Shown here: positions 19,395-58,660 of the stretch, in pieces | How positions within the stretch are numbered: the stretch's first letter is position 1 | Layout: each line of letters begins with the position of its first letter | From: Rebecca billardiae RCC1528 | Lineage: Eukaryota > Protista > Haptophyta | DNA length: 64,000 bases | Assembly (NCBI GenBank): GCA_965240325.2 | Contig: OZ251225.1 | Coordinates: 1,984,001 to 2,048,000 of the forward strand | Direction of reading: 5' to 3' | The notes under the pieces: generated by a model | Told to the model about the DNA's origin: nothing | Database searches by the model: none | What the model saw: only the letters and a program-made list of their open reading frames with translations | Position numbers and translations under genes: made by a program

Positions 19395-20059
19395 CGGCAA
19401 GCGGGCTGCGCAGACCAGCCTACTCGTGGCCGCCGACTCGCCGCTACAGCCGCAGAGGAATAGTGATACCCGGGAGAAACTGCTTGGGCCCGTGGTCGTA
19501 ACATTCTGGCGGCCAACTACTGCACCATTCACCACTTGGCCAAGTAGGCGACACTCTCGACGTCAACACGCGCGGCATCACTCACCTCTTTGTGCCTGAG
19601 CAGGCCGGACGACGTTATTGAACACCCCCCCCCAGCTGCGATCAACGTCGACAACGTGGTCGCTCACACCATCACCGTTCTGAGCTGTTCCACGTAACCG
19701 CAGTACAGTACCGCCATGACAGACTGAAGAATCAGGTGTTGGCTGCACCCTCGTGCCTGATGTAGTGTCTTCAAATCATAGCAGAAATACCGCCGCCATA
19801 CCCCGCCCATAGACTGACTACAAGGCGACGTAACAGACTCCGCGCGACGATGCCGCCTGACGAAATATATTATTGTTTTATTATTATAATAAATAATAAT
19901 ATAGTCATCAGCATATTCGTGCTCATCAGGCTTAGTTCACTGCTACCACGTTACCCGACTATCAGAACTTCCCACTACCGACAGTGAGTATACCGCCGAA
20001 GTCCTGGCAGCAGGCCACAGCCTTAATCCCGCCAGCCGCCCGGGCCGGCCTGGACCGAG

Positions 20060-20330
20060 TTCCAAAGGCCGTGCTGCGCGAGCAGCGCGAGTAGCGCGAC
20101 CACCGCGTCGGACCAGGGCTCGAGCAGGAAGTCCACGTCGAGATGCACCGCGTCGTACCCGTGCTTCTGCGCCAGCGTGCACGCCTCCTCGATGGGCAGC
20201 TGCTTGCCAAGCGCGCCGAGGTGCGGCTCGCAGGTCCCAGTCAGAGTCGGTGCCACGGTGGGAAGGTCTTGAGCAGCGAGGTGGGCGAGCCCTTGCCGGC
20301 CGTGAGTGGAGGGGCGCCGGTCGACATGAG
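20060..20330 (-). pseudogene. Decayed fragment resembling a sugar-phosphate isomerase/epimerase (xylose-isomerase-like TIM barrel) N-terminus; cassette A tail
   Basis: LGALGKQLPIEEACTLAQKHGYDAVHLDVDFLLEPWSDAVVALLAQHG; the same fragment, with different indels, follows each repeat ORF. Confidence 0.4.
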
Positions 20331-20495
20331 CGGAACAGGGGCGTGAAGTCGAGCGCGCTGAAGAACCACGGCCGGTGGCGTCGGCCGTGGCCGGTGCCGT
20401 CTCGGAATCGGCGGCCCGATGCCGGCGCTCGCTCGAACGAAAGCTCGTCGTGATGGCCGCCGGGAGTTCATCACGACGAGCCACGCTTCACGGCT

Positions 20496-21857
20496 TCATC
20501 GGCCTGCAGCGTCGCGAGCAGGGACCCTCCTGGCCATCACCACAGGTATGTCCTGTGGTTGCTGCCGTCGTGCTGCCCCCACCGCCATCGATGATGATGG
20601 TCGTCCTGGCACAGCGGTAGTGTTGATGCTTGCCGGTAGTCCCTGGTCGTAGTTGCCAGGGGCAGCCCGGATTGCATCACCTGCATTGCCACGCTGGCGC
20701 CGCTCGTCCAGGGCAAGGGCGCCATCATCGACCACCCCGTCGTCAACCGAGTGGATCGTGCCATCTGGCAAGCGCCAGCGGACGATGGTGACTGCGACGA
20801 GCGGCGGCGGTGCGGGCAGCTGCGGCGCGGCGACAGCCGCAATGCTGCCGGTGTGTTTGTGCCGTCGCTTCGCGGCGCGCGTGCCCTGGTCGCCGGTGCC
20901 ATGCTCCAGTCTGCGCTTGGGGACGGCGAGCTGAGTGTTGACCATGCCGGCCAGCTTGTGCTCAGCGCACCGGCTGGCGCGCGCGTCGCCCGGCATGCCG
21001 AAGTGAGGCTGCTTGGTGCAGCCGGCGTGACCGCACTTGGGGTTCTTCACGTCGACCATGCCGGCCAGCTTGTGCGTAGCGCACCGGCTGGCGCGCGCGT
21101 CGCCCGGCATGGCAAAGTAAGGCCCCTTGGTGCAGCCCGCGTGATCACACGTGGGGTGCTTCACGTCGACCATGCCGGCCAGCTTGTGCGTAGCGCACCG
21201 CCTGGCGCGCGCGTCGCCCGGCACGCCGAATGAAGGCCACTTCGTGCAGCCCGCGTGACCACACTTGGGGCTCCTCACGTCGACCATGCCGGCCAGCTTG
21301 TGCGTAGCGCACCGGCTGGCGCGCGCGTCGCCCGGCATGCCGAAGTGAGGCTGCTTGGTGCAGCCGGCGTGACCGCACTTGGGGTTCTTCACGTCGACCA
21401 TGCCGGCCAGCTTGTGCGTAGCACACCGGCTGGCGCGCGCGTCGCCCGGCATGCCAAAGTGAGGCTGCTTGGTGCAGCCCGCGTGAGCACACGTGGGGTT
21501 CTTCACGTCGACCATGCCGGCCAGCTTGTGCGCAGCGCACCGGCTGGCGCGCGCGTCACCCGGCATGCCGAACGAAGGCCGCGTGGTGCAGCCCGCGTGA
21601 TCACACTTGGGGTGCTTCACGTCGACCATGCCGGCCAGCTTGTGCGCAGCGCACCGGCTGGCGTGCGTGTCACCCGGCATGCCGAATGTAGGCCGCGTGG
21701 TGCAGCCGGCGTGACCACACGTGCGGGTCCTCACGTCGACCATGCCGGCCAGCTTGTGCGCAGCGCACCGGCTGGCGCGCGCGTCGCCCGGCATGCCGAA
21801 GTGAGGCCACGTGGTGCAGCCGGCGTGATCACACGTGGGGTTCTTCACGTCGACCAT
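20496..21857 (-). CDS. EsV-1-7-type Cys/His repeat protein, copy A (8 repeats)
   Basis: 38-aa repeat CxHxGCTxxPxFGMPGDARASRCAxHKLAGMVDV x8, then KRR-x13-KRRHK and a conserved ~130-aa tail; start codon uncertain (first MVDV used). Confidence 0.75.
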   Translation of the reverse strand: MVDVKNPTCDHAGCTTWPHFGMPGDARASRCAAHKLAGMVDVRTRTCGHAGCTTRPTFGMPGDTHASRCAAHKLAGMVDVKHPKCDHAGCTTRPSFGMPGDARASRCAAHKLAGMVDVKNPTCAHAGCTKQPHFGMPGDARASRCATHKLAGMVDVKNPKCGHAGCTKQPHFGMPGDARASRCATHKLAGMVDVRSPKCGHAGCTKWPSFGVPGDARARRCATHKLAGMVDVKHPTCDHAGCTKGPYFAMPGDARASRCATHKLAGMVDVKNPKCGHAGCTKQPHFGMPGDARASRCAEHKLAGMVNTQLAVPKRRLEHGTGDQGTRAAKRRHKHTGSIAAVAAPQLPAPPPLVAVTIVRWRLPDGTIHSVDDGVVDDGALALDERRQRGNAGDAIRAAPGNYDQGLPASINTTAVPGRPSSSMAVGAARRQQPQDIPVVMARRVPARDAAGR

Positions 21858-22031: not shown

Positions 22032-22917
22032 ATGATGGGGCGCGACGACGAGGCTGCAGCCGTGGAGTACGCGTGCGGCGACGGCGAGCTCTTTCCGCGC
22101 GAGTGTGCGGAGGACTTTGCCGAGTTTGCGCCCAAGCTCGAGGGCGTGCGCGCCGCTCATGAGCGTGCCAGCGCAGCCGCAGCGACGGCCGCGCCGGGGC
22201 CAGGGCCGGCGGCGCGTCCGGGCACCGGCGCCGGCCGCGCCGGCGCGCGCGGGCACCGGCCCCGCGCCCGCCAGCGCGAGCACCGCCGAGCGAGTCGCCG
22301 CGTTCGGCCTTCCCGCGACGTACGCGCCGCGCTACCGCGTCAACTTTGCGCTCGCGCCCGAGCCGAGCGGCCGGCGGCCGCGCGGTCTGAGCGAGGCGAC
22401 GGCCGCGGCCGCGCGCGAGACGGCGCTGCTGTACGAGGACTTTGCGCAGCGCGCGGGCCTGGAGTCGCTACGCGCGCTGCGCGCCTCGCGCCTCGCTCTG
22501 CCCGTCTCCGCCGCCGAGCCCGCCATACTCTCCGCGGTGCGCGACCACCAAATAGTTATTGTGCAGGCGGAGACGGGCTCTGGAAAATCGACGCAGGTGC
22601 CGCAGATGCTGCTGCGGGCGGGGTACCGCCACGTGGTGCTGACGCAGCCGCGCCGGCTCGCGGCAATCTCGCTCGCGCGGCGCGTCGGCGCCGAGGCCCT
22701 CCGCGAGCCGCGCGGCTCCGTCGGCCACGTCGTCCGCTTCGACTCGACCGCCGGGCCGCGCGCCGCCCTGTGCTTCGTCACGGAGGGGATCCTCCTGCGC
22801 GAGGCGGTGGCGGACCCGGCGCTGCGGCGGCACGAGGTGGTGGTGCTCGACGAGGTGCACGAGCGGCACGTCGCGACCGACCTGCTCCTCGCAGTCTGCC
22901 GCCAGATGCTCGCCCAC
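22032..22917 (+). pseudogene. DHX34: DHX34 5' fragment, copy A (frameshift near 22222, truncated after DEVH...CRQMLAH)
   Basis: Near-identical to the reverse complement of 46341-47228; 2-nt deletion; diverges into unrelated sequence at 22918. Confidence 0.85.
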
Positions 22918-23121
22918 GCCGGCAGGTGCAGCCGTGCTGCGACTGCAGTAGCCTACCGCAGCACGATGTGGGTGGCCCCTGACCGATGATCGTCAACACG
23001 GCGATGGTCAATGGGCATCACGGCTCTGCTGCAGCCATCATCACGTACTGCTGCATCTAAGCAGACTATGCTGATATGTGCGCGCATATGATGCACTCAG
23101 CACTACGAGCAACTACTGCTA

Positions 23122-26846: not shown

Positions 26847-26927
<81 letters not shown>

Positions 26928-42980: not shown

Positions 42981-45177
42981 TCAGCCGTCGCCGTGCGAGC
43001 GCTGATGCTCGCGCAGCTGCGCCAGCGTGACGATCAGCTTGGCGTGGCACGTCGGGCACGTCCAGTGGCGCGCCATGTGCTCACTGAAGCCGCTGCGCTC
43101 GTTGCCGCCCTCGGCGTCGGCGCGGGGCGCGGGCGCGCGGGCTGCCGACGCGCCCGCGCCGTGCCCTGGCGGGCCTGCCACCGGCGCCACGCCCGCTGCC
43201 GGCTGCTCGTGCCGCGGCCGAGCCGGCGGCGCGGCGAGCGCTCCCCAGCGCAGCCAGACCGCCACGTCCACACCGCGCGGCACCCTGTCCAGGCAGGCGT
43301 CTACCGCGGCGCGGTCGCCGCCCGCGGCCATCACGTCCGTCTGCAGCGCGTCCGCCTCCGCCTGCGCCAGCCGCAGCAGCCCGATCACCGCGGCCGGCCG
43401 CACCGGCCGCGGCGCGTCGCCGGCCGTGCGCGCGCAGAGGAACGCCTCGAGCTGCGCGCGCAGCGATTCAGGCTCGGCGCCGAAGGGCAGAGGGTCGGCG
43501 GCGCGCGCGATGTGCGCGATGGGCGCGGGCATCGAGCGCAGCGCGTCCTCGCGCGGCGCGCGCGGGTGCTGTGCCGCGATCGCGGCCGCGTCCGCCTCGT
43601 CCGCGCGCGCGTCCTCACGCGCACCCCCGCTCACCGCGCGCGCCCCGGAGCACACAGAGTTGCCTGAGCGGCCGCCGTCGTCGCGCGCGGCCGCCGAGCC
43701 GCGCGCGCGCTTGCGCCCGCCACCGCGTCGGGAGTCGGCGGGCTCCGGGCCGTCGTCCGCGCCACCGTCGTCCGCGCCCAGGCCGCCCTCAGCGGTGGCG
43801 GCGCGCACCGCGCGGGCCAGCTCGAGCTGCAGAGCCAGCCGCAACTCATGCGCGCGGAGCAGCAGCTGAGCGCACCCGCCGCTGCCGTGGCGCGCGGCGC
43901 GCGGCGCCGCCGCAGTCGCGCGCGCGGCAGCTGCCGTCGGCGCTTGGTCAGCGGCCGGTGCGCGCGGCGCCTGCGCCCGCTGCCCGTCCTCCCCCCGCGG
44001 GTCCGCACGCGCCGCGTCGCGTGGGCTGTGCACCTCGCGCTCGGCCTCGAGCTCGCGCAACTCGGGAGCGCGCGGCCCGAGATCGGCCTCCAGATCGAGA
44101 TCGGCCTCGAGATCGAAGAGCAGCCAATCATCGATCAGCAGCCGGCGGCAGCATTCGCTCGTCTCCACGCGGCCGGCGGCGAGGAGGAGCGAGGGCAGCG
44201 CGCGCGTGGGCACCGCGCCGAGCACGTACGGCCGCGTGGTGTGCAGCACGCTCGCGTAGCCGTACGCGCGCGCGCCGCCGCCGCCGCCACTGCCGCCGCC
44301 GCCATCGCCGCCGCCGCGCGGCGCGGGCGCGCGCAGCGGTTCACCCCACAGCGCCGACGACGGGTGCACGCGCGCGTCCACGCCGTGTCGGGTGCAGAGC
44401 AGCTGCTCGGCGGGCGGGAGCGAGCCGTTCGCCGCGTGCGCGACGGCGACGTTGGGGTAGCACGCGGCGAAGAGCGCGTGCCGCAGCAGCGCCTCCGCCG
44501 CGCCATCGCTGCCGTCGGCATCGGCGGCAGCGCCCGTGCGGCCATGCGCGGCCGCGGCCGCGCCGCCGTCCACGCCATGTGCCGCCGCCGCGCGGAGCGC
44601 GCCGCCGCCCGCGCGCATGAGCTGCGCGTGGCGGAACGCGACGCCCGCCAGGGCAGATTCGTCCTCCTCCGCCTCCTCGCCCCCCGCCTCCGCCTCCTCG
44701 CCGCCGCCCATCCCAGCGGCAAGCCCAGTCAGCTCGCCGTCGGCGCCGCGCGCCAACACAAGCGGCCGCGCGCGCCCGAGTGTGTCCAAGTCGCGCGCCG
44801 ACCGCAGCGCGCCGAGCTCGGCGGCGCTGATCGAGGTGCGCGGCGCGCGGCGCGCGGCGCTCGCGCGCGCGCCCGCGCGCGCGCAGAGCACGCGCAGCTG
44901 CCGCCGCAGCTGCAGCTCGAGCTGGCACGCGTCGTACAACTTCACCTCGTCGAGCGCGCGCGCGCGGCACCAAGCGCGGCCCGCGGCGCCGCCCGCGCGC
45001 GCCGCCACGATGGCGGAGGGCGCGGGCGCGCCGCCGCGTGGCGCGGGGCCGGCGCCGCCCGCGCGCCCTTCGACGACCGCGAGCCACTTGGCGCGCAGCT
45101 CGAGCAGGCACAGCGCGTCGCCGCGCGAGCGGTCGCCCAGGGCCGCGTCCCTCGCGCGCGCCACAGGCTCTGCCAGT

Positions 45178-45246
<69 letters not shown>

Positions 45247-47228
45247 AGCAAGGGAGACGGGACGGAGATGAGGGCGCTGGCGCCGAGCGCGGCGTCGAGG
45301 CAGCCGAGCGCGGCGCCGAGCGCGCACAGCCGGCCGACGAGCGGCTCGACTGGCAGGAACGCGAGGAACGTGCCCAGTGCCGTCAGCGTCTCGTCGTCGA
45401 CGTCGCCTGCCGTCGCGCCCGCCGCGCGCAGCGCGCGCTCGGCCGCGCGCGCCGCGCGCCGCGGCGGCGGGTCGAGAAACGGAAAGGACTCGAGGCGGCC
45501 GCGGAAGCCGAGCGCGCGCACGTGGAGGAGCACGCCCTCGGGCGGGACGCGGCGCACCTCCGGCGGCTCGTGCGCCGCCATCCCCTCCAGCTCCGCGCGC
45601 GAGTACAGCCGGAACGCCAGCCCAGGCCCGGTGCGGCCGGCGCGCCCCGCGCGCTGCGCCGCCGCCGCCTGTGAGATCCAAGCCGTCGCGAGCGTGCGGA
45701 CCGCGCCCGCCGCCTGGTGGGACATCACCTTGCCCAGCCCGCAGTCGATGACGAAGCGCACGCCGGGGATCGTCACCGACGTCTCGGCGATGTTCGTCGC
45801 GAGCACCAGCTTGCGCACGCCCGGCGGCGCCGGCCGGAACGCCGCCGCCTGCTCGTCGGCCGAGAGAGAACCGTGCAACGCTACTAGCACCCACCGGCCG
45901 GCGCGCGCCGCGTATGGCGCGAGCGTATCTCGGAGGGCGGAGATCTCGCGCGCGCCGGGGAGGAAGCAGAGGCAGTCCCCGCGCTCGGCGCGCGGCGTGC
46001 TCTCGTCGATCCGCTGCAGCAGGTGCACGTACCGCGCGGGCGCGAGCAGCTCGCCGATGCGTGACGGGTGCAGCCGGCGGTTGGCGCCGCCGCCGGCCTC
46101 AGCGCCGCCGTCATCGCCGCCGCCGCCGCCGCCGCCGCGTGCCGCGCCGTGCGCGAGCGACGGGCGCCCTCGCCGCCCATCCGCGCCGTTGGGCACGCCC
46201 ACGTGCTCGATCGCCACCGGGAACGAGCGGCCGGGCACCGTGACCAGCGCCGGCTCCGCGCCGGTCCCCTCGCGCAAGTAAGCGCAGAGCGCGCTCGCGT
46301 CCAGAGTAGCTGACATCAGCAGCAGCCGCGCGCGCGGTCGGTGGGCGAGCATCTGGCGGCAGACGGCGAGGAGCAGGTCGGTCGCGACGTGCCGCTCGTG
46401 CACCTCGTCGAGCACCACCACCTCGTGCCGCCGCAGCGCCGGGTCCGCCACCGCCTCGCGCAGGAGGATTCCCTCAGTGACGAAGCACAGGGCGGCGCGC
46501 GGCCCGGCGGTCGAGTCGAAGCGGACGACGTGGCCGACGGAGCCGCGCGGCTCGCGGAGGGCCTCGGCACCGACGCGCCGCGCGAGCGAGATCGCCGCGA
46601 GCCGGCGCGGCTGCGTCACCACCACGTGGCGGTACCCCGCCCGCAGCAGCATCTGTGGCACCTGCGTCGATTTCCCAGAGCCCGTCTCCGCCTGCACAAT
46701 AACTATTTGGTGGTCGCGCACCGCGGAGAGGATGGCGGGCTCGGCGGCGGAGACGGGCAGGGCGAGGCGCGAGGCGCGCAGCGCGCGCAACGACTCCAGG
46801 CCCGCGCGCTGCGCAAAGTCCTCGTACAGCAGCGCCGTCTCGCGCGCGGCCGCGGCCGTCGCCTCGCTCAGACCGCGCGGCCGCCGCCCGCTCGGCTCGG
46901 GCGCGAGCGCAAAGTTGACGCGGTAGCGCGGCGCGTACGTCGCGGGAAGGCCGAGCGCGGCGACTCGCTCGGCGATGCTCGCGCTGGCGGGCGCGGGGCC
47001 GGTGCGCGCGCGCGCCGGCGCGGCCGGCGCCGGCGCGGCCGGACGCGCGGCCGGCCCCGGCCCCGGCGCGGCCGTCGCTGCGGCTGCGCTGGCACGCTCA
47101 CGAGCGGCGCGCACGCCCTCGAGCTTGCGCGCAAACTCGGCAAAGTCCTCCGCACACTCGCGCGGAAAGAGCCCGCCGTCGCCGCACACGTACTCCACGG
47201 CTGCAGCCTCGTCGTCGCGCCCCGTCAT
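42981..47228 (-). CDS. DHX34: DHX34-like DEAH-box RNA helicase (NMD factor), full length
   Basis: Motifs AETGSGKST, TQPRR, DEVH, SAT, TNIAETSVT, QRAGRAGR; DHX34-type N-terminus LPATYAPRYRVN..LLYEDFAQR and C-terminal CxxC..H..H finger. Confidence 0.88.
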
Positions 47229-47319: not shown

Positions 47320-48830
47320 CACCGCTAACCACTGGGGACACGGCACCCAGGGTCGGAGAAAATCGGCGCGCTTTTTATTTCCGCCTTGCATTTATTCAGC
47401 CGCGCGCTGCGCGGCGGACGCGCGCGTCTCGGGCGAGCGGGCGACGGCGCCGCGCTCCCGTGCGTGTGGACGATCCCGCGAGCGCAGAGCCGGCGAGCTA
47501 GGCTGGGCAGTCGTGCTGAAGTGCCATTCGCCGCTTCGCGCCGCGCATCGCATTCGGCTGTACTTGCCTCGGGCCAGCACTTGTCTGTGCACACCGCCAC
47601 ACGGCCAGCCTCGCCCGCGTGCGCCATGCGAGGCGAGACACACACAGAGCATGCGCTTCCGCGCGGCGAGGCCTACGCTGTACGCACTGCGCTACCTTGC
47701 GCCGCCGCGCATGAGCGCGGGTCCGAACAGCTGCGTTCAGGTGTGCTGATTGCATCATTCATGCGAGCCGATTGGTCGAACAAGCGCTCTGGCCCGACGA
47801 TGACGTTGCAGCGCACGCCATGCTGATATGCGGTGACGCGGAGCATGTGCGCTCGCGCGGAGTGGCCACACACGTGACCGCTGTCCAGCTCTGCCCCGGC
47901 ATTGAACTCCCTGACTCGTGCTCCGACGTCAATCTTGGCCCGAGCTAGTACGTGCATGCATGCGTGCTGATGCAGAATATACCTGAACGAGGCCCATGAT
48001 GGCCTGCGTGTATGTGCCTCCTCGGATGACATGGCGCGTGTATGAATGTGTGTATACTACCTTGTCAAGCAGTAGCTCACGTCTGGACGTTCGTGTCGAA
48101 CTTGACGGTGCGCATCGTGCACACACGGTCAGCCTTGATAGACGCACCCGTGCAGCCGGAAGGCAGCATCAGCCTGCCTAAGACGTGAGCATCCAGCCCC
48201 GACGCCGCTTCCGGTGCCTGAATGGCGCGCGCTCCTTTCACGCGGGAATGTACTCACTACATCACTATCCAGAAGGGCGCATGTCAGTGCTTTGCATGCT
48301 CACACGACCCTCGCCGTAGGTCGATGCCAACCGCTGCGTGATGCTCGATCATGCCTTTTGACGGCTGTGTGACCCGTGCAGATGCGTATGCCAGGCAGCG
48401 TACTGTGACGAGCGATGCCGCGTGCATAAACTACCTGGACATTGCCCAGTGCAACCAAGTGCCGGACGCCGACGCCGCTGCTCGCGGCACGCGTGCAGTC
48501 AGCCGAGGAATGCACACAACTTCCTTGTTGGTGCGGCGCACGCGATGGCCTGAGGCGCGGCGGATGCAGTGATTCCGAACGGCGAGCGGTGGAACGACGC
48601 AAATGGCTGCTCTTCAGCCGCGCTCAACCACGCGCACCGCCTTCGCGGGCACGCAACTACCGCAGGAGGGCGCGCAGTCGGCGCCCATCTCGCCCCTCCA
48701 GCGCCGCCCAGCGCGCTGTCAGCGCAGCCGCCAGCGGCAGAGGTTGGTGGTGCTCTGACGGCATCACCAACATATTCGGAAAAGAAAATCCCCACCCGAA
48801 ATTCCTGCGCCCAGTGGGACCTTTGATCGG
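47320..48830. mobile_element. 1.5-kb insertion between DHX34 and EsV-1-7 copy B
   Basis: Absent from cassettes A, C and D (empty site CACATC-AAGC-TGCC in A and D); AAGC on both sides (47316-19, 48831-34); degenerate inverted ends containing CCACTGGG / CCCAGTGG. Confidence 0.6.
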
Positions 48831-48925: not shown

Positions 48926-51205
48926 ATGGACGACGTGAGCAGCCGCAAGTGTGGTCACACCGGCTGCACCACGTGGCCTCACTTCGGCATGCCGGGCGAC
49001 GCGCGCGCCAGCCGGTGCGCTGCGCACAAGCTGGCGGGCATGGTCGACGTGAAGAGCCCCAAGTGTGGTCACGCGGGCTGCACCACGCAGCCTTCGTTCG
49101 GCATGCCGGGCGACGCGCGCGCCAGCCGGTGCGCTACGCACAAGCTGGCCGGCATGGTCGACGTGAGCAGCCGCAAGTGTGGTCACACCGGCTGCACCAC
49201 GCGGCCTAACTTCGGCATGCCGGGCGACGCGCGCGCCAGTCGGTGCGCTGCGCACAAGCTGGCCGGCATGGTCGACGTGAGCCACCCCAAGTGTGGTCAC
49301 ACCGGCTGCACCACGCATCCTAACTTTGGCATGCCGGGCGGCGCGCGCGCCAGTCGGTGCGCTACGCACAAGCTGGCGGGCATGGTCGACGTGAAGAGCC
49401 CCAAGTGTGGTCACGCGGGCTGCACCACGCAGCCTTCGTTCGGCATGCCGGGCGACGCGCGCGCCAGCCGGTGCGCTACGCACAAGCTGGCCGGCATGGT
49501 CGACGTGAGCAGCCGCAAGTGTGGTCACACCGGCTGCACCACGCGGCCTAACTTCGGCATGCCGGGCGACGCGCGCGCCAGTCGGTGCGCTGCGCACAAG
49601 CTGGCCGGCATGGTCGACGTGAGCCACCCCAAGTGTGGTCACACCGGCTGCACCACGCATCCTAACTTTGGCATGCCGGGCGACGCGCGCGCCAGTCGGT
49701 GCGCTACGCACAAGCTGGCCGGCATGGTCGACGTGAGCAGCCGCAAGTGTGATCATGCTGGCTGCACCACGCGGCCTTACTTCGGCAAGCCGGGTGACGC
49801 GCGCGCCAGCCGGTGCGCTACGCACAAGCTGGCCGGCATGGTCGACGTGAGGAGCCGCAAGTGTGATCACGCGGGCTGCACCACGCGGCCTTACTTCGGC
49901 ATGCCGGGTGACGCGCGCGCCAGCCGGTGCGCTGCGCACAAGCTGGCCGGCATGGTCGACGTGAAGCACCCCAAGTGTGATCACGTCGGCTGCACCAAGC
50001 GGCCTTACTTCGGCATGCCGGGCGATGCGCGCGCCAGCCGGTGCGCTGCGCACAAGCTGGCCGGCATGGTCGACGTGAGAAACCCCAAGTGTGGTCACGC
50101 CGGCTGCACCAAGCAGCCTTACTTCGGCATGCCGGGCGACGCGCGCGCCAGTCGGTGCGCTACGCACAAGCTGGCCGGCATGGTCGACGTGAGCAGCCGC
50201 AAGTGTGATCATGCTGGCTGCACCACGCGGCCTTACTTCGGCAAGCCGGGTGACGCGCGCGCCAGCCGGTGCGCTACGCACAAGCTGGCCGGCATGGTCG
50301 ACGTGAGGAGCCGCAAGTGTGATCACGCGGGCTGCACCACGCGGCCTTACTTCGGCATGCCGGGTGACGCGCGCGCCAGCCGGTGCGCTGCGCACAAGCT
50401 GGCCGGCATGGTCGACGTGAAGCACCCCAAGTGTGATCACGTCGGCTGCACCAAGCGGCCTTACTTCGGCATGCCGGGCGATGCGCGCGCCAGCCGGTGC
50501 GCTGCGCACAAGCTGGCCGGCATGGTCGACGTGAGAAACCCCAAGTGTGGTCACGCCGGCTGCACCAAGCAGCCTTACTTCGGCATGCCGGGCGACGCGC
50601 GCGCCAGTCGGTGCGCTACGCACAAGCTGGCCGGCATGGTCGACGTGAAGAACCCCACGTGCGGTCACGCCGGCTGCACCATGCGGCCTTACTTCGGCAT
50701 GCCAAGCGACGCGCGCGCCAGCCGATGCGCTACTCACAAGCTGGCCGGCATGGTGTTCAGTCGACTCGCCGTCTCCAAGCGCAGGCTGGAGCATGGCACC
50801 GGCGACCAGGGCACACGCGCCGCGAAGCGACGGCACAAACACACCGGCAGCATTGCGGCTGTTACGGACGCCGCGCCGCAGCTGGCCGCACCGCCGCCGC
50901 TCGTCGCAGTCACCATCGTCCGCTGGCGCTTGCCAGATGGCACGATCTACTCGGTTGATGACGGGGTGGTCGATGATGGTGCCCTTGCCCTGGACGAGCG
51001 GCATCAGCGTGGCAATGCAGGTGACGCAATCCGGGCTGCCCCTGGCAACTGCGACCAGGGACTACCTGCAAGCATCAACACTACCGCTGCGCCAGGACTA
51101 CCATCATCATCGATGGCGGCGGGGGCAGCACGACGGCAGCAACCAGAGGACATACCTGTGGTGATGGCCAGGAGGGTCCCGGCCCGCGACGCCGCAGGCC
51201 GATGA
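48926..51205 (+). CDS. EsV-1-7-type repeat protein, copy B (16 repeats)
   Basis: Sixteen 114-bp units, uninterrupted frame, same NLS-like motif and tail. Confidence 0.8.
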   Translation: MDDVSSRKCGHTGCTTWPHFGMPGDARASRCAAHKLAGMVDVKSPKCGHAGCTTQPSFGMPGDARASRCATHKLAGMVDVSSRKCGHTGCTTRPNFGMPGDARASRCAAHKLAGMVDVSHPKCGHTGCTTHPNFGMPGGARASRCATHKLAGMVDVKSPKCGHAGCTTQPSFGMPGDARASRCATHKLAGMVDVSSRKCGHTGCTTRPNFGMPGDARASRCAAHKLAGMVDVSHPKCGHTGCTTHPNFGMPGDARASRCATHKLAGMVDVSSRKCDHAGCTTRPYFGKPGDARASRCATHKLAGMVDVRSRKCDHAGCTTRPYFGMPGDARASRCAAHKLAGMVDVKHPKCDHVGCTKRPYFGMPGDARASRCAAHKLAGMVDVRNPKCGHAGCTKQPYFGMPGDARASRCATHKLAGMVDVSSRKCDHAGCTTRPYFGKPGDARASRCATHKLAGMVDVRSRKCDHAGCTTRPYFGMPGDARASRCAAHKLAGMVDVKHPKCDHVGCTKRPYFGMPGDARASRCAAHKLAGMVDVRNPKCGHAGCTKQPYFGMPGDARASRCATHKLAGMVDVKNPTCGHAGCTMRPYFGMPSDARASRCATHKLAGMVFSRLAVSKRRLEHGTGDQGTRAAKRRHKHTGSIAAVTDAAPQLAAPPPLVAVTIVRWRLPDGTIYSVDDGVVDDGALALDERHQRGNAGDAIRAAPGNCDQGLPASINTTAAPGLPSSSMAAGAARRQQPEDIPVVMARRVPARDAAGR

Positions 51206-52173
51206 AGCCGTGAAGCGTGGCTCATCGTGATGATTTCCCGGCGGCCATCACGGCCAGCTTGCGTTTGAGCGAGCGCCGCCATCGGGCCGCCGATTCCGAG
51301 ACGGCACCGGCCACGGCCGACGCCACCGGCCGTGGTTCTTCAGCGCGTTCGACTTCACGCCCCTGTTCCGCTCATGTCGACAGGCGCCCCTCCACTCGCG
51401 GCCGGCAGGGGCTCGCCCACCTCGCTGCTCAAGACCTTCCCACCGTCACACCGTGGCACCGACTCTGACTGGGACCTGCCAGCCGCACGTCGGCACGCTC
51501 GGCTGTCGGCAAGCAGCTGCCCATCCCGGAGGCGTGCGCGCTGGCGCAGAAGCACGGGTACGACGCGGTGCATCTTGACGTGGACTTCCTGCTCGAGCCC
51601 TGACCCGACGCGGTGGTCGCGCTGCTCGCTCAGCACTGCGGCGCCTCCGGAACTTCCAGGCCGGCCCGGGCGGCTGGCTGGATGAAGGCTGCAGCCTGCT
51701 GCCACAGCTGCTGACAGCTGCGGAGCTGCCAGGACTGGTACTGGTAGCGTGGTGGGATACTTGACGAGTGGTACTGGTGACCTGTAGTCAGCTACTCTAA
51801 CTCTGTCCTGGACCTGAGCACGAATGATGACGAGTGACGAATGTGGCAGTCGCCAGTCGGCGACCGAGTCGTCGTAGACTCGTCGTAGCTAGTCGTACGT
51901 AGTAGTAGACGGTAGTAGTGTCGTCTGCTGCTTGCAGACTTTCATTGCGCGTAGTGCTGCTGATGATGCGCATCATCGTCATCGATCACGCTGCGCGCGC
52001 ATATCATTTGCTTAGACGCAGCAGACGAACGTGATGATGCATGGCAGCAGCAGAGTCTCAGTGATGCCCACTGGTAACCATCGTCGTACGTTGACGATCG
52101 TCGGTCAGGGGCCATTCGCATCGTGCTGCGGTAGGCTATGTACTGCAGTCGCAGCACGGCTGCACCCGCCGGC

Positions 52174-53063
52174 GTGGGCGAGCATCTGGCGGCAGACTGC
52201 GAGGAGCAGGTCGGTCGCGACGTGCCGCTCGTGCACCTCGTCGAGCACCACCACCTCGTGTGCCGCCGCAGCGCCGGGTCCGCCACCGCCTCGCGCAGGA
52301 GGATCCCCCCAGCGACGAAGCACAGGGCGGCGCGCGGCCCGGCGGTCGAGTCGAAGCGGACGACGTGGCCGACGGAGCCGCGCGGCTCGCGGAGGGCCTC
52401 GGCACCGACGCGCGGCGCGAGCGAGATCGCCGCGAGCCGGCGCGGCTGCGTCACCACCACGTGGCGGTACCCCGCCCGCAGCAGCATCTGTGGCACCTGC
52501 GTCGATTTCCCAGAGCCCGTCTCCGCCTGCACAATAACTATTTGGTGGTCGCGCACCGCGGAGAGGATGGCGGGCTCGGCGGCGGAGACGGGCAGGGCGA
52601 GGCGCGAGGCGCGCAGCGCGCGCAACGACTCCAGGCCCGCGCGCTGCGCAAAGTCCTCGTACAGCAGCGCCGTCTCGCGCGCGGCCGCGGCCGTCGCCTC
52701 GCTCAGACCGCGCGGCCGCCGCCCGCTCGGCTCGGGCGCGAGCGCAAAGTTGACGCGGTAGCGCGGCGCGTACGTCGCGGGAAGGCCGAGCGCGGCGACT
52801 CGCTCGGCGATGCTCGCGCTGGCGGGCGCGGGGCCGGTGCGCGCGCGCGCCGGCGCGGCCGGCGCCGGCGCGGCCGGACGCGCGGCCGGCCCCGGCCCCG
52901 GCGCGGCCGTCGCTGCGGCTGCGCTGGCACGCTCACGAGCGGCGCGCACGCCCTCGAGCTTGCGCGCAAACTCGGCAAAGTCCTCCGCACACTCGCGCGG
53001 AAAGAGCCCGCCGTCGCCGCACACGTACTCCACGGCTGCAGCCTCGTCGTCGCGCCCCGTCAT
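52174..53063 (-). pseudogene. DHX34: DHX34 5' fragment, copy C (+2 frameshift near 52261, truncated at the same point as copy A)
   Basis: Almost identical to 46341-47228. Confidence 0.85.
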
Positions 53064-53187
53064 CGCTCCATCATCTATCACCGTCATTGTTGCGGGACGG
53101 CAGCCATCCTGGCCGGCCGCCGGCGAAGCTGGCAAGCTGCCGAGCTTGCCGCGCTGCGCAGTGCGAGTTGCGGACCCTGGACCAAGG

Positions 53188-54189
53188 ATGGACACCCTTG
53201 CCTGGACACCCTTCCGGCTTGGCTCGGCGACGCACAACGCCAGCCGGTGCGCTGCGCACAAGCTGGCCGGCATGGTCGACGTGAGCAGCCGCAAGTGTGG
53301 TCACGCCGGCTGCACCACGTGGCCTCACTTCGGCATGCCGGGCGACGCGCGCGCCAGCCGGTGCGCTGCGCACAAGCTGGCCGGCATGGTCGACGTGAAG
53401 CACCCCACGTGTGGTCACGCAGGCTGCACCACGCGGCCTTACTTTGGCTTGCCCGGCGACGCGCGCGCCAGCCGGTGCGCTACGCACAAGCTGGCCGGCA
53501 TGATCGACGTGAAGAACCCCAAGTGCGGTCACGCCGGCTGCACCACGCGGCCTTCGTTCGGCATGCCAGGCGACGCGCGCGCCAGCCGGTGCGCTACGCA
53601 CAAGCTGGCCGGCATGGTCGACGTGAAGAACCCCACGTGTGGTCACGCCGGCTGCACCAAGGGGCCTTCGTTCGGCATGCCGGGTGACGCGCGCGCCAGC
53701 CGGTGCGCTACGCACAAGCTGGCCGGCATGGTGAACACTCGGCTCGCCGTCTCCAAGTCCAAGCGCAGGCTGGAGCATGGCACCGGTGACCAGGGCACAC
53801 GCGCCGCAAAGCGACGGCACAAACACACCGGCAGCATTGCGGCTGTCTCGGACGCAGCGCTGCAGCTGCCCGCACCGCCGCCGCTCGTCGCAGTCACCAT
53901 TGTCCGCTGGCGCTCGTCAGATGGCACGATCCACTCGGTTGACGACGGGGTGGTCGATGATGGTGCCCTTGCCCTGGACGAGCGGCGTCAGCGTGGCAAT
54001 GCAGGTGACGCAATCCGGGCTGCCCCTGGCAACTACGACCAGGGACCACCAGCAAGCATCAACACCACAGCTGTGCCAGCACTACCATCATCATCGATGG
54101 TGGCAGGAGCAGCACGACGACAGCAACCACAGGACATACCTGTGGTGATGGCCAGGAGGGTCCCGGCCCGCGACGCTGCAGGCCGATGA
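53188..54189 (+). CDS. EsV-1-7-type repeat protein, copy C (4 repeats)
   Basis: Open frame, 4 units plus tail; frame is also open upstream to ATG 52810, antisense to the DHX34 fragment. Confidence 0.75.
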   Translation: MDTLAWTPFRLGSATHNASRCAAHKLAGMVDVSSRKCGHAGCTTWPHFGMPGDARASRCAAHKLAGMVDVKHPTCGHAGCTTRPYFGLPGDARASRCATHKLAGMIDVKNPKCGHAGCTTRPSFGMPGDARASRCATHKLAGMVDVKNPTCGHAGCTKGPSFGMPGDARASRCATHKLAGMVNTRLAVSKSKRRLEHGTGDQGTRAAKRRHKHTGSIAAVSDAALQLPAPPPLVAVTIVRWRSSDGTIHSVDDGVVDDGALALDERRQRGNAGDAIRAAPGNYDQGPPASINTTAVPALPSSSMVAGAARRQQPQDIPVVMARRVPARDAAGR

Positions 54190-55176
54190 AGCCGTGAAGC
54201 GTGGCTCATCGTGGTGCTCTCCCGGCGGGCATCACTGCCAGCTTTCGTTTGAGAGCGAGCGCCGGCATCGGGCAGCCGATTCCGAGACGGCACCGGCCAC
54301 GGCCGACGCCACCGGCCGTGGTTCTTCAGCGCGCTCGACTTCACGCCCCTGTTCCGCTCATGTCGACAGGCGCCCCTCCACTCACGGCCGGCAAGGGCTC
54401 GCCCACCTCGCTGCTCAAGACCTTCCCACCGTGGCACCGACTCTGACTGGGACATGCGAGCCGCACCTCGGCGCGCTCGGCAAGCAGCTGCCCATCCAGG
54501 AGGCGTGCGCGATGGCGCAGAAGCACGGGTACGACGCGGTGCATCTCGACGTGGACTCCCTGCTCGAGCCCTGGGCCGACGCGGTGGTCGGGCTGCTCGC
54601 GCAGCACGGCCTCCGGAACTTCCAGGCCGGCCACAGTGGCGGCTGGCGGGAAGGCTGCGGCCTGCCAGGACCGTAGTCGCGCCAGTGGCAGCATTGCGGG
54701 AATCTGGATCAGTAGATGACGATTGGTCGCGTGGTAACTCTATTGTCGTCACTCACTACTCCCTGAGCACGAATCCATGCGGTCCCGATGGTCCGGTCGT
54801 CGGTTGCCAGACATGCAGTCACGACTGTGCATGACTCATCACTATCTAGTCGTAGTGTCTGCTGCATGGTGTCGGCGTACCGCGTAGTGCTCATGAGATT
54901 GAGTGATGCCATAAGATGCCAGCAGTAGCTCTAGTTACTGCCTCTAGTCCAATGATGACTTGTGTCTTGTGCACTCGCGCGCGTGCATCATCAGCCCATG
55001 CGCGCGTGCATCATCATCAGCATGCGCGCGCGCATATCATCATCGTCTGCTTAGATGCAGTAGCAGTACGTGATGATGGCAGCAGAGCGTGATGCCAGTT
55101 GACCATCGACAGCATCGTGTTGACGATCGTTGGTCAGGGCGGACAGGGCCACAGTGACAGAGCGGTGCGAAGCCTG

Positions 55177-55900
55177 GCGGTCGAGTCGAAGCGGACGACG
55201 TGGCCGACGGAGCCGCGCGGCTCGCGGAGGGCCTCGGCGCCGACGCGCCGCGCCAGCGAAATTGCCGCGAGCCGGCGCGGCTGCGTCACCACCACGTGGC
55301 GGTACCCCGCCCGCAGCAGCATCTGTGGCACCTGCGTCGATTTCCCAGAGCCAGTCTCCGCCTGCACGAGAACCATTTGGTGGTCGCGCACCGCGGAGAG
55401 GATGGCGGGCTCGGCGGCGGAGACGGGCAGGGCGAGGCGCGAGGCGCGCAGCGCGTGTAGCGACTCCAGGCCCGCGCGCTGCGCAAAGTCCTCGTACAGC
55501 AGCGCCGTCTCGCGCGCGGCCGCGGCCGCCGCCTCGCTCAGACCGCGCGGCCGCCGCCCGCTCGGCTCGGGCGCGAGTGCAACGTTGACGCGGTAGCGCG
55601 GCGCGTACGTCGCGGGAAGGCCAAGCGCGGCGACTCGCTCGGCGATGCTCGCGCTGGCGGGCGCGGGGCCGGTGCCCGCGCGCGCCGGCGCGGCCGGCGC
55701 CGGCGCGGCCGGACGCGCCGCCGGCCCCGGCCCCGGCGCGGCCGTCGCTGCGGCTGCGCTGGCACGCTCACGAGCGGCGCGCACGCCCTCGAGCTTGCGC
55801 GCAAACTCGGCAAAGTCCTCCGCACACTCGCGCGGAAAGAGCCCGCCGTCGCCGCACACGTACTCCACGGCTGCGGCCTCGTCGTCGCGCCCCAAGTCAT
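55177..55900 (-). pseudogene. DHX34: DHX34 5' fragment, copy D (frameshift right after the ATG; truncated at RFDST)
   Basis: ATG ACTT GGG CGC vs ATG ACG GGG CGC in the intact gene; further internal deletion before motif II. Confidence 0.85.
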
Positions 55901-56074
55901 CGCTCCATCACCGTCATTATTGCGGGACGGCAGCCATCCTGGCTGGCCGCCGGAGAAGCTGGCACATCAAGCTGCCGCGCTTGCCGCGCTGCGCAGTGCG
56001 AGTTGCGGACCCTGGACACCCTTGGCTCGGCGACGCACAACGCCAGCCGGTGCGCTGCGCACAAGCTGGCCGGC

Positions 56075-57100
56075 ATGGTCGACGTGAAGCACCCTACGTG
56101 TGATCACGCGGGCTGCACAAAGCAGCCTTCGTTCGGCATGCCGGGCGACGCGCGCGCCAGCCGGTGCGCTACGCACAAGCTGGCCGGCATGGTCGACGTG
56201 AGAAACCTCAAGTGTGGTCACACCGGCTGCATCACGCGGCCTTACTTCGGCATGCCGGGCGACGCGCGCGCCAGCCGGTGCGCTACGCACAAGCTGGCCG
56301 GCATGGTCGACGTGAAGCACCCCACGTGTGATCACGCGGGCTGCACCAAGCAGCCTTCGTTCGGCATGCCGGGCGACGCACGCGCCAGCCGGTGCGCTAC
56401 GCACAAGCTGGCCGGCATGGTCGACGTGAGAAACCTCAAGTGTGGTCACACCGGCTGCATCACGCGGCCTTACTTCGGCATGCCGGGTGAAGCGCGCGCC
56501 AGCCGGTGCGCTGCGCACAAGCTGGCCGGCATGGTCGACGTGAAGAACCCCACGTGTGCTCACGCGGGCTGCACCACGCGGCCTTACTTCGGCATGCCGG
56601 GTGACGCGCGCGCCAGCCGGTGCGCTACGCACAAGCTGGCCGGCATGGTGTTCAGTCGACTCGCCGTCCCCAAGCGCAGGCTGGAGCATGGCACCGGCGA
56701 CCATGGCACGCGCGCAGCGAAGCGACGGCACAAACACAGCAGCCGCATTGCGGCTGTCTCGGACGCCGCACCACAGCTGGCCGCACCGTCGCCGCTCGTC
56801 GCAGTCACCATCGTCCGCTGGCGCTTGCCAGATGGCACGATCCACTCGGTTGACGACGGGGTGGTCCATGATGGTGCCTTTGCCCTGGACGAGCGGCGCC
56901 AGCGTGGCAATGCAGGTGACGCAATCCGGGCTGCCCCTGGCAACTGCGACCAGGGACTACCGGCAAGCATCAACACTACCGCTGCGCCAGGACGACCATC
57001 ATCATCGATGGCGGCGGGGGCAGCACGACGGCAGCAACCACAGGACATACCTGTGGTGATGGCCAGGAGGGTCCCGGCCCGCGACGCTGCAGGCCGATGA
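56075..57100 (+). CDS. EsV-1-7-type repeat protein, copy D (5 repeats)
   Basis: Open frame, 5 units plus tail. Confidence 0.75.
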   Translation: MVDVKHPTCDHAGCTKQPSFGMPGDARASRCATHKLAGMVDVRNLKCGHTGCITRPYFGMPGDARASRCATHKLAGMVDVKHPTCDHAGCTKQPSFGMPGDARASRCATHKLAGMVDVRNLKCGHTGCITRPYFGMPGEARASRCAAHKLAGMVDVKNPTCAHAGCTTRPYFGMPGDARASRCATHKLAGMVFSRLAVPKRRLEHGTGDHGTRAAKRRHKHSSRIAAVSDAAPQLAAPSPLVAVTIVRWRLPDGTIHSVDDGVVHDGAFALDERRQRGNAGDAIRAAPGNCDQGLPASINTTAAPGRPSSSMAAGAARRQQPQDIPVVMARRVPARDAAGR

Positions 57101-58660
57101 AGCCGTGAAGCGTGGCTCGTCGTGGTGCTCTCCCGGCGGCCATCACGACGAGCTTTCGTTTGAGCGAGCGCCGGCATCGGGCCGCCGATTCCGAGACGGC
57201 ACCGGCCACGGCCGACGCCACCGGCCGTGGTTCTTCAGCGCGTTCGACTTCACGCCCCTGTTCCGCTCGTGTCGACCGGCGCCCCTCCACTCGCGGCCGG
57301 CAAGGGCTCGCCCACCAAGCTGCTCAAGACCTTCACCGTGGCACCTACTCTGACTGGGACCTGCGAGCAGCACGTCGGCGCGCTCGGCAAGCAGCTGCCT
57401 ATCCCGGAGGCGTGCGCGCTGGCGCAGAAGCACGGGTACGGCGCGGTGCATCTCGACGTGGAGTTCCTGCTCGAGCCCTGGCCCGACGCTGTGGTCGCTC
57501 TGCTCGCGCAGCACGGCGCCTCCTGAACCTCCAGGCCGGCCCGGGCGGCTGGCAGCGGGATGAAGGCTGCGGCCTGCTGCCACAGCTGCTGATAGCTGCC
57601 AGGACTCGTGGTGGGATATTGTGGGATATTGATGACGTGGTTCTCTGGTACTGGCAACCTGTCGTGAGCTGTCCTGATGAGTAGAATGTGACAGTCGTCG
57701 TACAGTACTCTCGTACTCTGAGTTCCGCGTACTCGTAGGCTTCACTCCGTATAGTGACTAGTGAGTCTGTGCTGAGCTGTACTTACTGTATACAGGGTCT
57801 CCAACATTAAACCGGGACATCACTTTGGGCAGCAGCTCAGCGTACGGCCTGTGGCTGCCTCGCGCGGGGTCAGGAGCGGCCAGCTCGGCTCGTGTGCACC
57901 CCACTAGGTCTGTCTGCGACCGCGCATAGCCGGGCAGCCCGCGTGCGGCGTGGAGCACCCCTCTGGGTCATGCGGACAGTCGGCACAAGGCTGGTCTTGA
58001 GGGCAGTGATGAGTGAAGCAGCCGTGTGGCTTCTGCGCATGTCTGTAGCCAGCAAGCCCGCTCAAGGCCGCGCAGATATTATTACGTGGCATGGTCGATG
58101 ACTATGCGGCATGCGCTCGACAGCCCTGGGCAAGCCCGGACGTAGGCGTAGCGCTACACCAGGAGTATATACGGCCCGATCGGACCAGCCTACCAGTTGC
58201 GCACCTCGCTTGCACAGCTGCTGCACAGCCCATCGATCGGCTCTGGCCGTGCAGGCAAGGGCTACAGTCGGCGCCACTACCCGCAGCGAACGCTGGAGAC
58301 CCACCAGTGCGCGCACCAACCCGCCCGCCGCCAAATGCAACCGTGCGCCAGATACGAATTTTAGCAGGCATGCCACCCGCGGGGGCTCCGTGGACCTGTT
58401 CAGAGCCAACCGCTAGTCGGTTGAGCTGTACATCCAAGCCAGCCCTGGCCACACGCTGAGCGCGCCGCTCGCTGCACCCACACCCTCAGTGACCCTGTCG
58501 TCATCCGAGGAGTAAGGTCCATGGCGCTCATGTGAGCCTCTGGCCCATCTCATCGTTAGCAGCCGTACCAGTAGTCAGCAAAAATCAGTGTCCGAACAAT
58601 TGTTGGGGACTGACCTGTAGTAACAGGCGGCTATGCAATTAGTACTACTTTAAATATTAT

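What the first reader, a model, noticed from the sequence alone, without database searches (positions are those of the whole stretch)
19950..57700. Four-copy cassette in which repeat genes appear to carry the DHX34 5' end/bidirectional promoter with them
Seen: each repeat ORF lies head-to-head with a DHX34 5' end, with start codons only ~125-180 bp apart in A, C and D. B pairs with the intact helicase, C and D follow in tandem, and A is an inverted copy ~30 kb away that shares C's exact truncation junction (..CRQMLAH|GCCGGC..GGTGCAGCC). Each of the three DHX34 fragments has its own frameshift, while all four repeat ORFs are intact. Inference: selection keeps the repeat genes, and the ~0.7-0.9 kb of DHX34 is kept as promoter DNA, which would tie expression to an RNA-surveillance helicase. 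The fragments could also yield aberrant or antisense RNA against DHX34, since the frames of A and C stay open into the helicase antisense strand.
Basis: partly seen in the sequence, partly recalled or inferred. Interest (0 to 1): 0.75.

Follow-up and report, generated by a model that had tools for sequence, protein, structure and literature searches.

The report
Duplicated zinc-repeat genes dragging helicase stub
An alga has copied one cysteine-repeat gene at least ten times, and every copy still carries the broken front end of the neighbouring helicase gene because all descend from a single sloppy duplication, an ordinary by-product of gene-family growth rather than a new regulatory device.

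Summary
The window, from a 72-Mb, ~70% GC algal genome (not human), has four head-to-head units. Each pairs an EsV-1-7 (PF19114) cysteine-repeat gene with the 5' end of one DEAH, DHX34-like helicase gene.

- The genome holds 11 such cassettes: one with the intact helicase and 10 with fragments.
- Seven fragments stop at the same junction, after helicase codon 296. Three are further shortened.
- So there was one founding partial duplication, which was then amplified.
- All 11 repeat ORFs are intact, with pN/pS about 0.45 in the non-repeat tail.
- The helicase stubs evolve neutrally: private substitutions fall 23/26/29 over the codon positions, and frameshifts are scattered.
- Their low divergence (about 3%) is uniform over the former coding sequence. 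It fits gene conversion: B and C differ at 1 site in ~825 bp, against 5.5% in the tail.
- Transposons have landed in the ~175-bp divergent intergenic region in three copies, including the intact pair.
- The closest paralogue is intact without any helicase DNA.
- No Argonaute (Piwi) domain was found in the genome.

Verdict: this is hitch-hiking pseudogene DNA plus a shared compact promoter region. It is a new instance of a known kind and of modest interest. Another window of this scan noted tandem EsV-1-7 arrays in the same genome.

The parts
42981..47228 (-). Intact single-copy DEAH/RHA helicase gene (DHX34-like), 1415 aa from the first ATG. It is the source of all the stubs.
   Evidence: DEAD and Helicase_C domains. 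Best solved relatives are Prp22/DHX8-type DEAH helicases, E about 1e-79. Atlas feature neighbours are DHX34 clusters at 0.98. The 3' 3.36 kb is unique in the genome.
47320..48830 (.). 1.5-kb transposon-like insertion that splits the helicase/repeat-gene intergenic region of unit B. The core shared with other genomic copies is about 47329-48817.
   Evidence: Absent from A, C and D in the alignment. At least 40 dispersed copies at 92-100% identity genome-wide.
48926..51205 (+). Repeat gene B: EsV-1-7 array of 16 Pfam modules of 38 aa (114 nt), followed by a ~150-aa basic tail.
   Evidence: PF19114 at 736 bits with 16 stretches. Intact ORF of 759 aa.
51206..52173 (+). 3' flank of B, an indel-rich spacer, and the ~190-bp 'junction DNA' (51967-52173) that precedes the stub in every derived copy.
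52174..53063 (-). Helicase stub C (codons 1-296, with a 2-nt insertion at CDS position 801). It differs from B at 1 of ~825 bp from position 750 to the intergenic region, which marks a gene-conversion tract.
53064..53271 (.). Divergent intergenic region of unit C (208 bp). The last ~57 bp before the repeat ATG are a decayed half-module.
53272..54189 (+). Repeat gene C: 305 aa, 4 Pfam modules.
55157..55900 (-). Helicase stub D. It has a 2-nt insertion just after the ATG and lacks the distal 142 nt, a deletion shared with out-of-window copy H.
56075..57100 (+). Repeat gene D: 341 aa, 5 modules. Its 3' flank runs to about 57599.
20496..21857 (-). Repeat gene A (inverted copy): 453 aa, 8 modules. 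Its 3' flank runs down to about 20005.
22032..22917 (+). Helicase stub A (codons 1-296, with a 2-nt deletion at CDS position 191).
22918..23095 (+). Junction DNA of unit A, homologous to 51967-52173. It shows that A derives from a C-like copy and not directly from B.

Best explanation
The cassette is an ordinary product of gene-family growth. It needs no selection on the helicase-derived coding DNA.

1. Starting state. An EsV-1-7 cysteine-repeat gene lay head-to-head with a single-copy DEAH (DHX34-like) helicase gene, about 175 bp between start codons.
2. Founding event. One tandem duplication had its left breakpoint 888 nt into the helicase coding sequence. It produced a copy made of a helicase stub, the whole divergent intergenic region and the repeat gene. 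Unit C sits where that founder would be.
3. Amplification. The unit was then multiplied by further tandem and dispersed segmental duplication, to 10 derived copies over about 350 kb of contig 7 plus one on contig 13. Every copy therefore carries the stub by descent.
4. Fate of the parts. The repeat genes stay intact under purifying selection. They very probably use the compact intergenic region as their promoter (inferred). The ex-coding helicase DNA is a hitch-hiking pseudogene that takes frameshifts and neutral substitutions.
5. Homogenisation. Gene conversion and unequal exchange between copies, and with the intact gene, partly homogenise the stubs.
For: - The genome has 11 loci with the helicase 5' end. 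Each adjoins an EsV-1-7 gene in the same head-to-head layout.
- Seven stubs end at the same nucleotide, after codon 296, and are preceded by homologous junction DNA. D and H share one extra deletion, and K is shorter.
- The rest of the helicase is single-copy.
- All 11 repeat ORFs are intact and share the same tail. The tail has pS 0.091 and pN 0.041.
- Private substitutions in the stubs fall 23/26/29 over codon positions 1/2/3. Frameshifts are scattered and partly shared between subsets of copies.
- Diversity is flat at about 3% across the stub.
- B and C differ at 1 site in ~825 bp, against 5.5% in the tail. E and H differ by 1.1% against 6.5%. The stub tree and the tail tree disagree.
- Tandem clustering of EsV-1-7 genes is already reported in brown algae (10.1101/2024.02.19.579948). 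Other arrays occur in this genome.
Against: - The stubs are less diverged from one another (about 3%) than the 3' flank (5-7%), the junction DNA (about 8%) or synonymous sites of the tail (about 9%). Some constraint on the stub therefore cannot be excluded. I attribute the difference to gene conversion and to the indel-prone, low-complexity flanks, but I did not prove this.
- In the tandem arrays the spacers between units align poorly. That is unusual for simple unequal crossing-over.
- There are no expression data, so promoter use is inferred only.
Confidence: 0.75

Rival explanations
1. Selection retains the 0.7-0.9 kb helicase segment as promoter or enhancer DNA, and this couples the repeat genes' expression to the helicase's bidirectional promoter.
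For: - All 10 derived copies keep at least ~490 nt of the stub and the complete intergenic region.
- The stubs are 2-3 times less diverged than neighbouring non-coding or synonymous sites.
- The three partial losses (D/H and K) all removed the promoter-distal end.
- Three copies (B, I, J) carry transposon insertions in the ~175-bp intergenic region, while the 8.2 kb of stub has none. My arithmetic gives p of about 0.007. This fits open, promoter-like chromatin.
Against: - Retention is fully explained by one founding junction and the young age of the copies.
- Diversity is flat along the stub, not lowest near the start.
- The distance of each stub to the intact gene equals the neutral per-lineage expectation (my inference).
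- Clear conversion tracts explain the homogeneity.
- ORFs stay intact where transposons separate the stub from the gene by 1.5-3.6 kb (B, I, J), where a 1.1-kb palindromic insertion does so in K, and in the closest paralogue, which has no helicase DNA.
Confidence: 0.12
2. The cassette is cargo of a mobile element, through Helitron/Helentron-type or Pack-type gene capture. It spread by transposition and not by segmental duplication.
For: - The copies are dispersed, lie in both orientations, and one is on another contig. All share one capture-like junction.
- Hairpin-bearing repeat termini abut copies A and J.
- The spacers in the arrays are poorly conserved.
Against: - No shared sharp termini, terminal inverted repeats or target-site duplications were found at the cassette ends.
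- The ends of homology differ between copies, from about -91 to -200 bp on the left, and the right ends vary.
- Most copies lie in local tandem arrays within 350 kb.
- The repeat termini next to A and J are on opposite sides and look like independent insertions.
Confidence: 0.08
3. The stubs are functional RNA genes. They would make antisense or decoy transcripts that regulate the helicase (DHX34) or nonsense-mediated decay.
For: - The stubs keep the helicase start and upstream DNA, so they could be transcribed.
- In the tandem arrays the upstream repeat gene converges on the next stub, so read-through would give helicase-antisense RNA (layout).
Against: - The substitution pattern is neutral and the frameshifts and deletions vary between copies.
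- No Rfam family matches the region.
- No Piwi/Argonaute domain was detected in the 72-Mb genome. Introns could hide one.
- There are no expression data.
Confidence: 0.03
4. The copies are assembly artefacts.
For: Repeat-rich arrays of 114-nt modules are hard to assemble.
Against: - The copies differ by 2-9%, in module number, in private indels and in transposon insertions.
- The assembly has 41 contigs for 72 Mb.
Confidence: 0.02

Closest known systems
Tandem or segmental duplications that capture part of a neighbouring gene, as surveyed in Drosophila (PMC4069613, PMC5460883; titles and abstracts seen)
   Same: One breakpoint lies inside a neighbouring gene. This leaves a truncated, decaying fragment next to a complete duplicated gene, and later copies inherit the same junction.
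   Different: Here the unit was amplified to 10 derived copies. The captured piece is the 5' end on the far side of a shared ~175-bp divergent intergenic region. The fragments still exchange sequence with the functional gene.
EsV-1-7 domain gene family of brown algae, including IMMEDIATE UPRIGHT (10.1101/2024.02.19.579948)
   Same: The same Pfam motif (PF19114), large lineage-specific expansions, and genes clustered in tandem arrays.
   Different: The host is a very GC-rich alga that earlier notes call haptophyte-type, not a brown alga. The arrays hold 4-16 near-identical 38-aa modules plus a basic tail. The paper says most other lineages have few or no members, whereas this genome gives more than 2,000 candidate motif matches.
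Gene/pseudogene pairs that undergo gene conversion, such as CYP21A2/CYP21A1P or GBA/GBAP1 in humans (from my own knowledge, not checked here)
   Same: A functional gene and a nearby truncated or frameshifted copy share a long tract of identity (B/C: 1 difference in ~825 bp), while the flanks have diverged.
   Different: The direction and any consequences are unknown here. There are ten potential partners, not one.
Bidirectional (divergent) promoters of head-to-head gene pairs (PMC3403606; title and abstract seen)
   Same: Two start codons lie 174-208 bp apart on opposite strands.
   Different: There is no transcription evidence. In the only pair with an intact helicase, a 1.5-kb transposon now splits the region.

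Membership tests
EsV-1-7 cysteine-rich repeat proteins (Pfam PF19114) | Match to the PF19114 profile above its curated cut-off of 25 bits | tested here: met
   A scores 398.8 bits (8 stretches), B 736.3 bits (16) and C 212.9 bits (4). D was not scanned from its + strand ORF; five modules were seen by pattern.
EsV-1-7 cysteine-rich repeat proteins (Pfam PF19114) | Repeated Cys/His motif of the C-x4-C ... C-x2-H type in each module | tested here: met
   Translations show the motif in every 38-aa module of all 11 copies.
DHX34 orthologue (DEAH/RHA helicase) | DEAH-type ATP-binding domain and the helicase C-terminal domain | tested here: met
   PF00270 and PF00271 score above their cut-offs. E about 1e-79 to DEAH helicases (Prp22/DHX8, DHX9, DHX36, HrpA).
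DHX34 orthologue (DEAH/RHA helicase) | HA2/ratchet and OB-fold auxiliary domains | tested here: inconclusive
   OB_NTP_bind gives only E = 0.019 (15.5 bits, below the cut-off) and HA2 is not reported. The protein has long low-complexity inserts.
DHX34 orthologue (DEAH/RHA helicase) | C-terminal DHX34-type C2H2 finger, and closer to DHX34 than to other DEAH paralogues | tested here: inconclusive
   A CxxC...HxxxxH motif sits at the extreme C-terminus, but the Pfam scan gave only weak generic zinc-finger matches. Atlas feature neighbours are DHX34 clusters at 0.98, which is a lead and not an orthology test. No DHX34 chain was among the solved-structure hits.
Partial-gene segmental duplication (hitch-hiking pseudogene fragment) | Identical truncation junction shared by the copies, and a single full-length source gene | tested here: met
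Partial-gene segmental duplication (hitch-hiking pseudogene fragment) | Neutral decay of the fragment: frameshifts, and substitutions evenly spread over the codon positions | tested here: met
   private substitutions fall 23/26/29, and 8 of the 9 stubs covering at least ~746 nt have a frameshift (J has none; K, the tenth and shortest at ~490 nt, has none in the part it retains).
Bidirectional promoter pair | Head-to-head genes with starts less than 1 kb apart | tested here: met
   174, 208 and 174 bp in A, C and D. B is 1697 bp, or 186 bp without the transposon.
Bidirectional promoter pair | Divergent transcription start sites, or co-expression from the shared region | not testable with these tools
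   No RNA-seq, CAGE or chromatin data are available.
Transposon-mediated gene capture (Helitron/Helentron, Pack-type) | Defined element termini (or terminal inverted repeats) and target-site features at the cassette ends, shared by the copies | tested here: not met
   the ends of homology are staggered, and no shared termini, inverted repeats or target-site duplications were seen. The inspection was by alignment and by eye, not with a dedicated tool.

The most novel reading that the evidence does not exclude
The helicase's compact divergent promoter, together with the stub, may have become a portable expression module. A lineage-specific EsV-1-7 subfamily would depend on it. The stubs would be transcribed into RNAs bearing premature stop codons, or converging RNAs, that feed back on the helicase or on the decay pathway it serves. 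Gene conversion from the intact gene would keep the module fresh.
Probability: 0.07. Interest if true: 0.55.

Novelty: new member of a known kind. Interest (0 to 1): 0.22.

Why it matters
The main value is as a caution. Four neighbouring copies that all carry the same gene stub look selected. Genome-wide, however, the pattern reduces to one founding breakpoint followed by amplification.

The locus is also useful in its own right:
- It is a clean natural series: 11 copies, datable, with different module numbers, stub lengths and transposon insertions. It could be used to study how EsV-1-7 arrays expand in a non-brown alga.
- It could show how gene conversion links a single-copy essential-type helicase to ten pseudogene fragments.
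- It could show whether transposons target compact promoters in this genome.

If RNA data later show that the stubs are needed for expression, or are transcribed against the helicase, the interest would rise.

Tried and rejected
- Bacterial reading of 'DHX34' as HrpA. Rejected: the genome is 72 Mb with thousands of EsV-1-7 motifs, so it is eukaryotic. It is not human (70% GC, algal gene content), so the human-contig rule did not apply.
- Transposon capture of the whole cassette. I looked for shared termini, inverted repeats and target-site duplications in 1.2-kb flanks of all copies and found none.
- Promoter constraint. A sliding-window diversity scan showed no dip towards the start. The intergenic alignment shows conserved blocks but also an indel hotspot.
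- Non-coding RNA or tRNA in the cassettes. There are no Rfam hits. The only tRNA call (39473-39557) lies outside the cassettes.
- DHX34-specific zinc finger by Pfam. Only weak generic hits were found.
- Ancestral promoter in paralogues. The nearest paralogues (contigs 13, 11, 24) share only module-derived sequence upstream of the ATG.
- Bacterial promoter and terminator scans were not used, because they do not apply to a eukaryote.
- The large protein searches were not spent, because no claim here rests on them.
Full report
**What the sequence is.** The window is G000 contig 7, 1,984,001-2,048,000, from a 72-Mb, 41-contig assembly. GC content is 56-80% in 2-kb windows. The repeat ORFs match Pfam PF19114, the EsV-1-7 cysteine-rich motif, at 213-736 bits. 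A six-frame scan gives more than 2,000 candidate motif matches genome-wide. Earlier notes of this scan call the organism a haptophyte-type alga; I did not test that.

**Checking the observation.** Self-BLAST, repeat finding and a four-way alignment confirm four units.
- A, inverted: repeat CDS 20496-21857(-), helicase stub 22032-22917(+).
- B: intact helicase CDS 42981-47228(-), repeat CDS 48926-51205(+).
- C: stub 52174-53063(-), repeat CDS 53272-54189(+).
- D: stub 55157-55900(-), repeat CDS 56075-57100(+).

The start codons are 174, 208 and 174 bp apart in A, C and D. A and C stop at the same helicase nucleotide, after codon 296 (..CRQMLAH). That point lies between helicase motifs II and III. 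Both are preceded by homologous 'junction' DNA. Each in-window stub has a frameshift. All four repeat ORFs are intact, with 8, 16, 4 and 5 modules of 38 aa, and they share a tail of about 150 aa with a basic KRR...KRRHKH stretch. The frames that stay open into the helicase antisense strand are what 70-75% GC DNA gives by chance. By my arithmetic, about 1.4% of codons would be stops.

**The picture is larger than four copies.** A search of the whole genome with the 979-bp helicase 5' end found 11 loci at 94-100% identity.
- A to D lie in the window.
- E lies about 1 kb beyond the window's end.
- F, G and H form a tandem trio about 90 kb further on, on the other strand.
- I lies about 16 kb before the window.
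- K lies about 200 kb before the window.
- J is on contig 13.

Every one adjoins an EsV-1-7 gene in the same head-to-head layout. The remaining 3.36 kb of the helicase is single-copy. Seven stubs (A, C, E, F, G, I, J) end at the identical junction, preceded by the same ~90-200 bp of junction DNA. D and H share one further 142-nt distal deletion with the same filler. K keeps only about 490 nt. So there was one founding partial duplication. Unit C lies exactly where a tandem founder of B would lie, with B's downstream flank joined to helicase position 888. All other copies descend from that product, and A derives from a C-like copy, not from B.

**Are the stubs under selection?** Three results say no.
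- Against the intact gene, private substitutions in the stubs fall 23, 26 and 29 times on codon positions 1, 2 and 3.
- Mean pairwise diversity is about 3% in the stub. It is 5.5% in the tail CDS, 5-7% in the 3' flank and about 8% (with many indels) in the junction DNA. Synonymous sites of the tail give 9%. Taken alone, this could suggest constraint on the stub.
- However, diversity is flat along the 888 nt and does not fall towards the promoter. Each stub's distance to B is 2.2-3.9%, about half the ~5.5% pairwise divergence of the tail plus proximal 3' flank. I read that as the neutral per-lineage rate.

There is also direct evidence of sequence exchange. B and C differ at one site in ~825 bp, but by 5.5% in the tail. 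E and H differ by 1.1% against 6.5%. Shared indels and the two trees conflict. Conversion templated by the intact gene would also explain why the homogeneity stops sharply at the junction, because B has no homology beyond it. This last point is my inference.

**Are the repeat genes under selection?** Yes, moderately. All 11 ORFs are intact (I's tail runs off the fetched DNA), and pN/pS is about 0.45 in the tail.

**The promoter question.** The true intergenic DNA is only about 120 bp. The last ~57 bp before the repeat ATG are a decayed half-module. The closest paralogue lacking helicase DNA is at contig 13, 2,389,121-2,390,371. Its tail is 90% identical and its ORF is intact at 416 aa. It shares sequence with the cassette only from that half-module onward. 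More distant arrays on contigs 11 and 24 share only module sequence. The ~120 bp next to the helicase start is therefore specific to this subfamily, and it is the obvious candidate promoter. Any duplication that keeps the gene expressed must include it, and with it at least the edge of the helicase.

Several results argue against any need for the 0.7-0.9 kb of former coding DNA:
- Stubs of about 746 nt (D, H) and about 490 nt (K) sit beside intact genes.
- Four copies carry large insertions between the stub and the gene, at four different sites.
  - B has a 1.5-kb element with at least 40 near-identical genomic copies.
  - J has a 1.67-kb element with terminal inverted repeats and at least 15 copies.
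  - I has 3.6 kb made of three repeat families.
  - K has a 1.1-kb palindromic insertion whose arms are made of the cassette's own promoter sequence.
- The contig-13 paralogue has no stub at all.

Three copies carry transposon insertions in about 1.9 kb of intergenic target, whereas the 8.2 kb of neutral stub has none. My binomial estimate gives p of about 0.007. This suggests that the intergenic region is open, promoter-like chromatin. It is indirect support for promoter activity in the copies, not for a role of the stub.

**Antisense or decoy RNA.** This cannot be tested here. From the layout, a transcribed stub would give sense RNA with premature stop codons, running into the 3' end of the preceding repeat gene. 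Helicase-antisense RNA would need read-through from that gene. No Rfam family matches the region. A six-frame search found no Piwi (Argonaute) domain in the genome, although introns could hide one.

**Helicase identity.** The protein is a DEAH/RHA helicase. Its language-model feature neighbours are DHX34 clusters at 0.98, and it ends in a CxxC...HxxxxH motif. Pfam did not confirm a DHX34-specific finger or the HA2/OB domains. 'DHX34-like' is reasonable, but orthology is not shown.

**How the copies spread.** The ends of cassette homology are staggered, and I saw no shared termini, inverted repeats or target-site duplications. In the tandem arrays the 270-1000 bp spacers share only islands of homology. 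Solitary copies begin and end in this AT-rich, microsatellite-like spacer. That would fit break-prone spacers, or looped-out single units that re-inserted, but this is speculation.

**Comparison and verdict.** Tandem duplications that capture part of a neighbouring gene are common (PMC4069613, PMC5460883). Tandem arrays of EsV-1-7 genes are already described in brown algae (10.1101/2024.02.19.579948). Another window of this scan noted such arrays in this same genome. This locus is a new and tidy instance of a known kind: an 11-member cassette family founded by one partial duplication, with a hitch-hiking helicase pseudogene stub that still exchanges sequence with its functional parent. I score interest at about 0.2. 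It would rise if RNA data showed that the stub is required for expression or is transcribed against the helicase.

Noticed in passing
window 47320-48830: A 1.5-kb non-coding dispersed repeat (core about 47329-48817) has at least 40 copies at 92-100% identity across the genome, most at 96% or more. It is evidently a recently active non-autonomous transposon. Here it sits 92 bp upstream of the ATG of the only intact helicase copy.
   Followed up: partly
window 46480-47305 versus 52320-53132: A gene-conversion tract links the functional helicase and the neighbouring stub C: 1 difference in ~825 bp, while the flanks differ by 3-5%. The direction is unknown. A stub-to-gene event that reached a frameshift would break the single-copy helicase.
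   Followed up: partly
L007:5668-6778 (contig 7, 1,776,668-1,777,778): In copy K the intergenic region holds a 1.1-kb insertion. It is bounded by inverted repeats of at least 55 bp that are built from the cassette's own promoter sequence, so it looks like a palindromic rearrangement and not a transposon.
   Followed up: no
L008:7121-8371 (contig 13, 2,389,121-2,390,371): The closest paralogue of the cassette genes has a 90%-identical tail and an intact 416-aa ORF with 7 modules, but no helicase DNA. Its upstream region is unrelated from 57 bp before the ATG and contains a GC-rich hairpin like those at repeat termini.
   Followed up: partly
window 23096-23200 and L005 about 2970-3030: A similar GC-rich hairpin-bearing sequence abuts copy A upstream and copy J downstream. 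It looks like the terminus of a common repeat family, possibly Helitron-like.
   Followed up: no
L004:5160-8753: The 3.6-kb insertion in copy I is a stack of three different dispersed repeat families, of about 0.7, 1.1 and 1.3 kb, each with many 94-99% identical copies elsewhere.
   Followed up: partly
window 26866-27092 and 27832-28040: Two arrays of an 8-bp microsatellite lie about 900 bp apart (repeat family D18).
   Followed up: no
window 23665-24511 versus 37121-37991: An inverted pair of about 0.9 kb at 78% identity lies between unit A and the helicase. It was not examined.
   Followed up: no
whole genome (G000): A six-frame search found no Piwi-domain (Argonaute) match at E <= 1e-5 in the 72-Mb assembly.
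   Followed up: no
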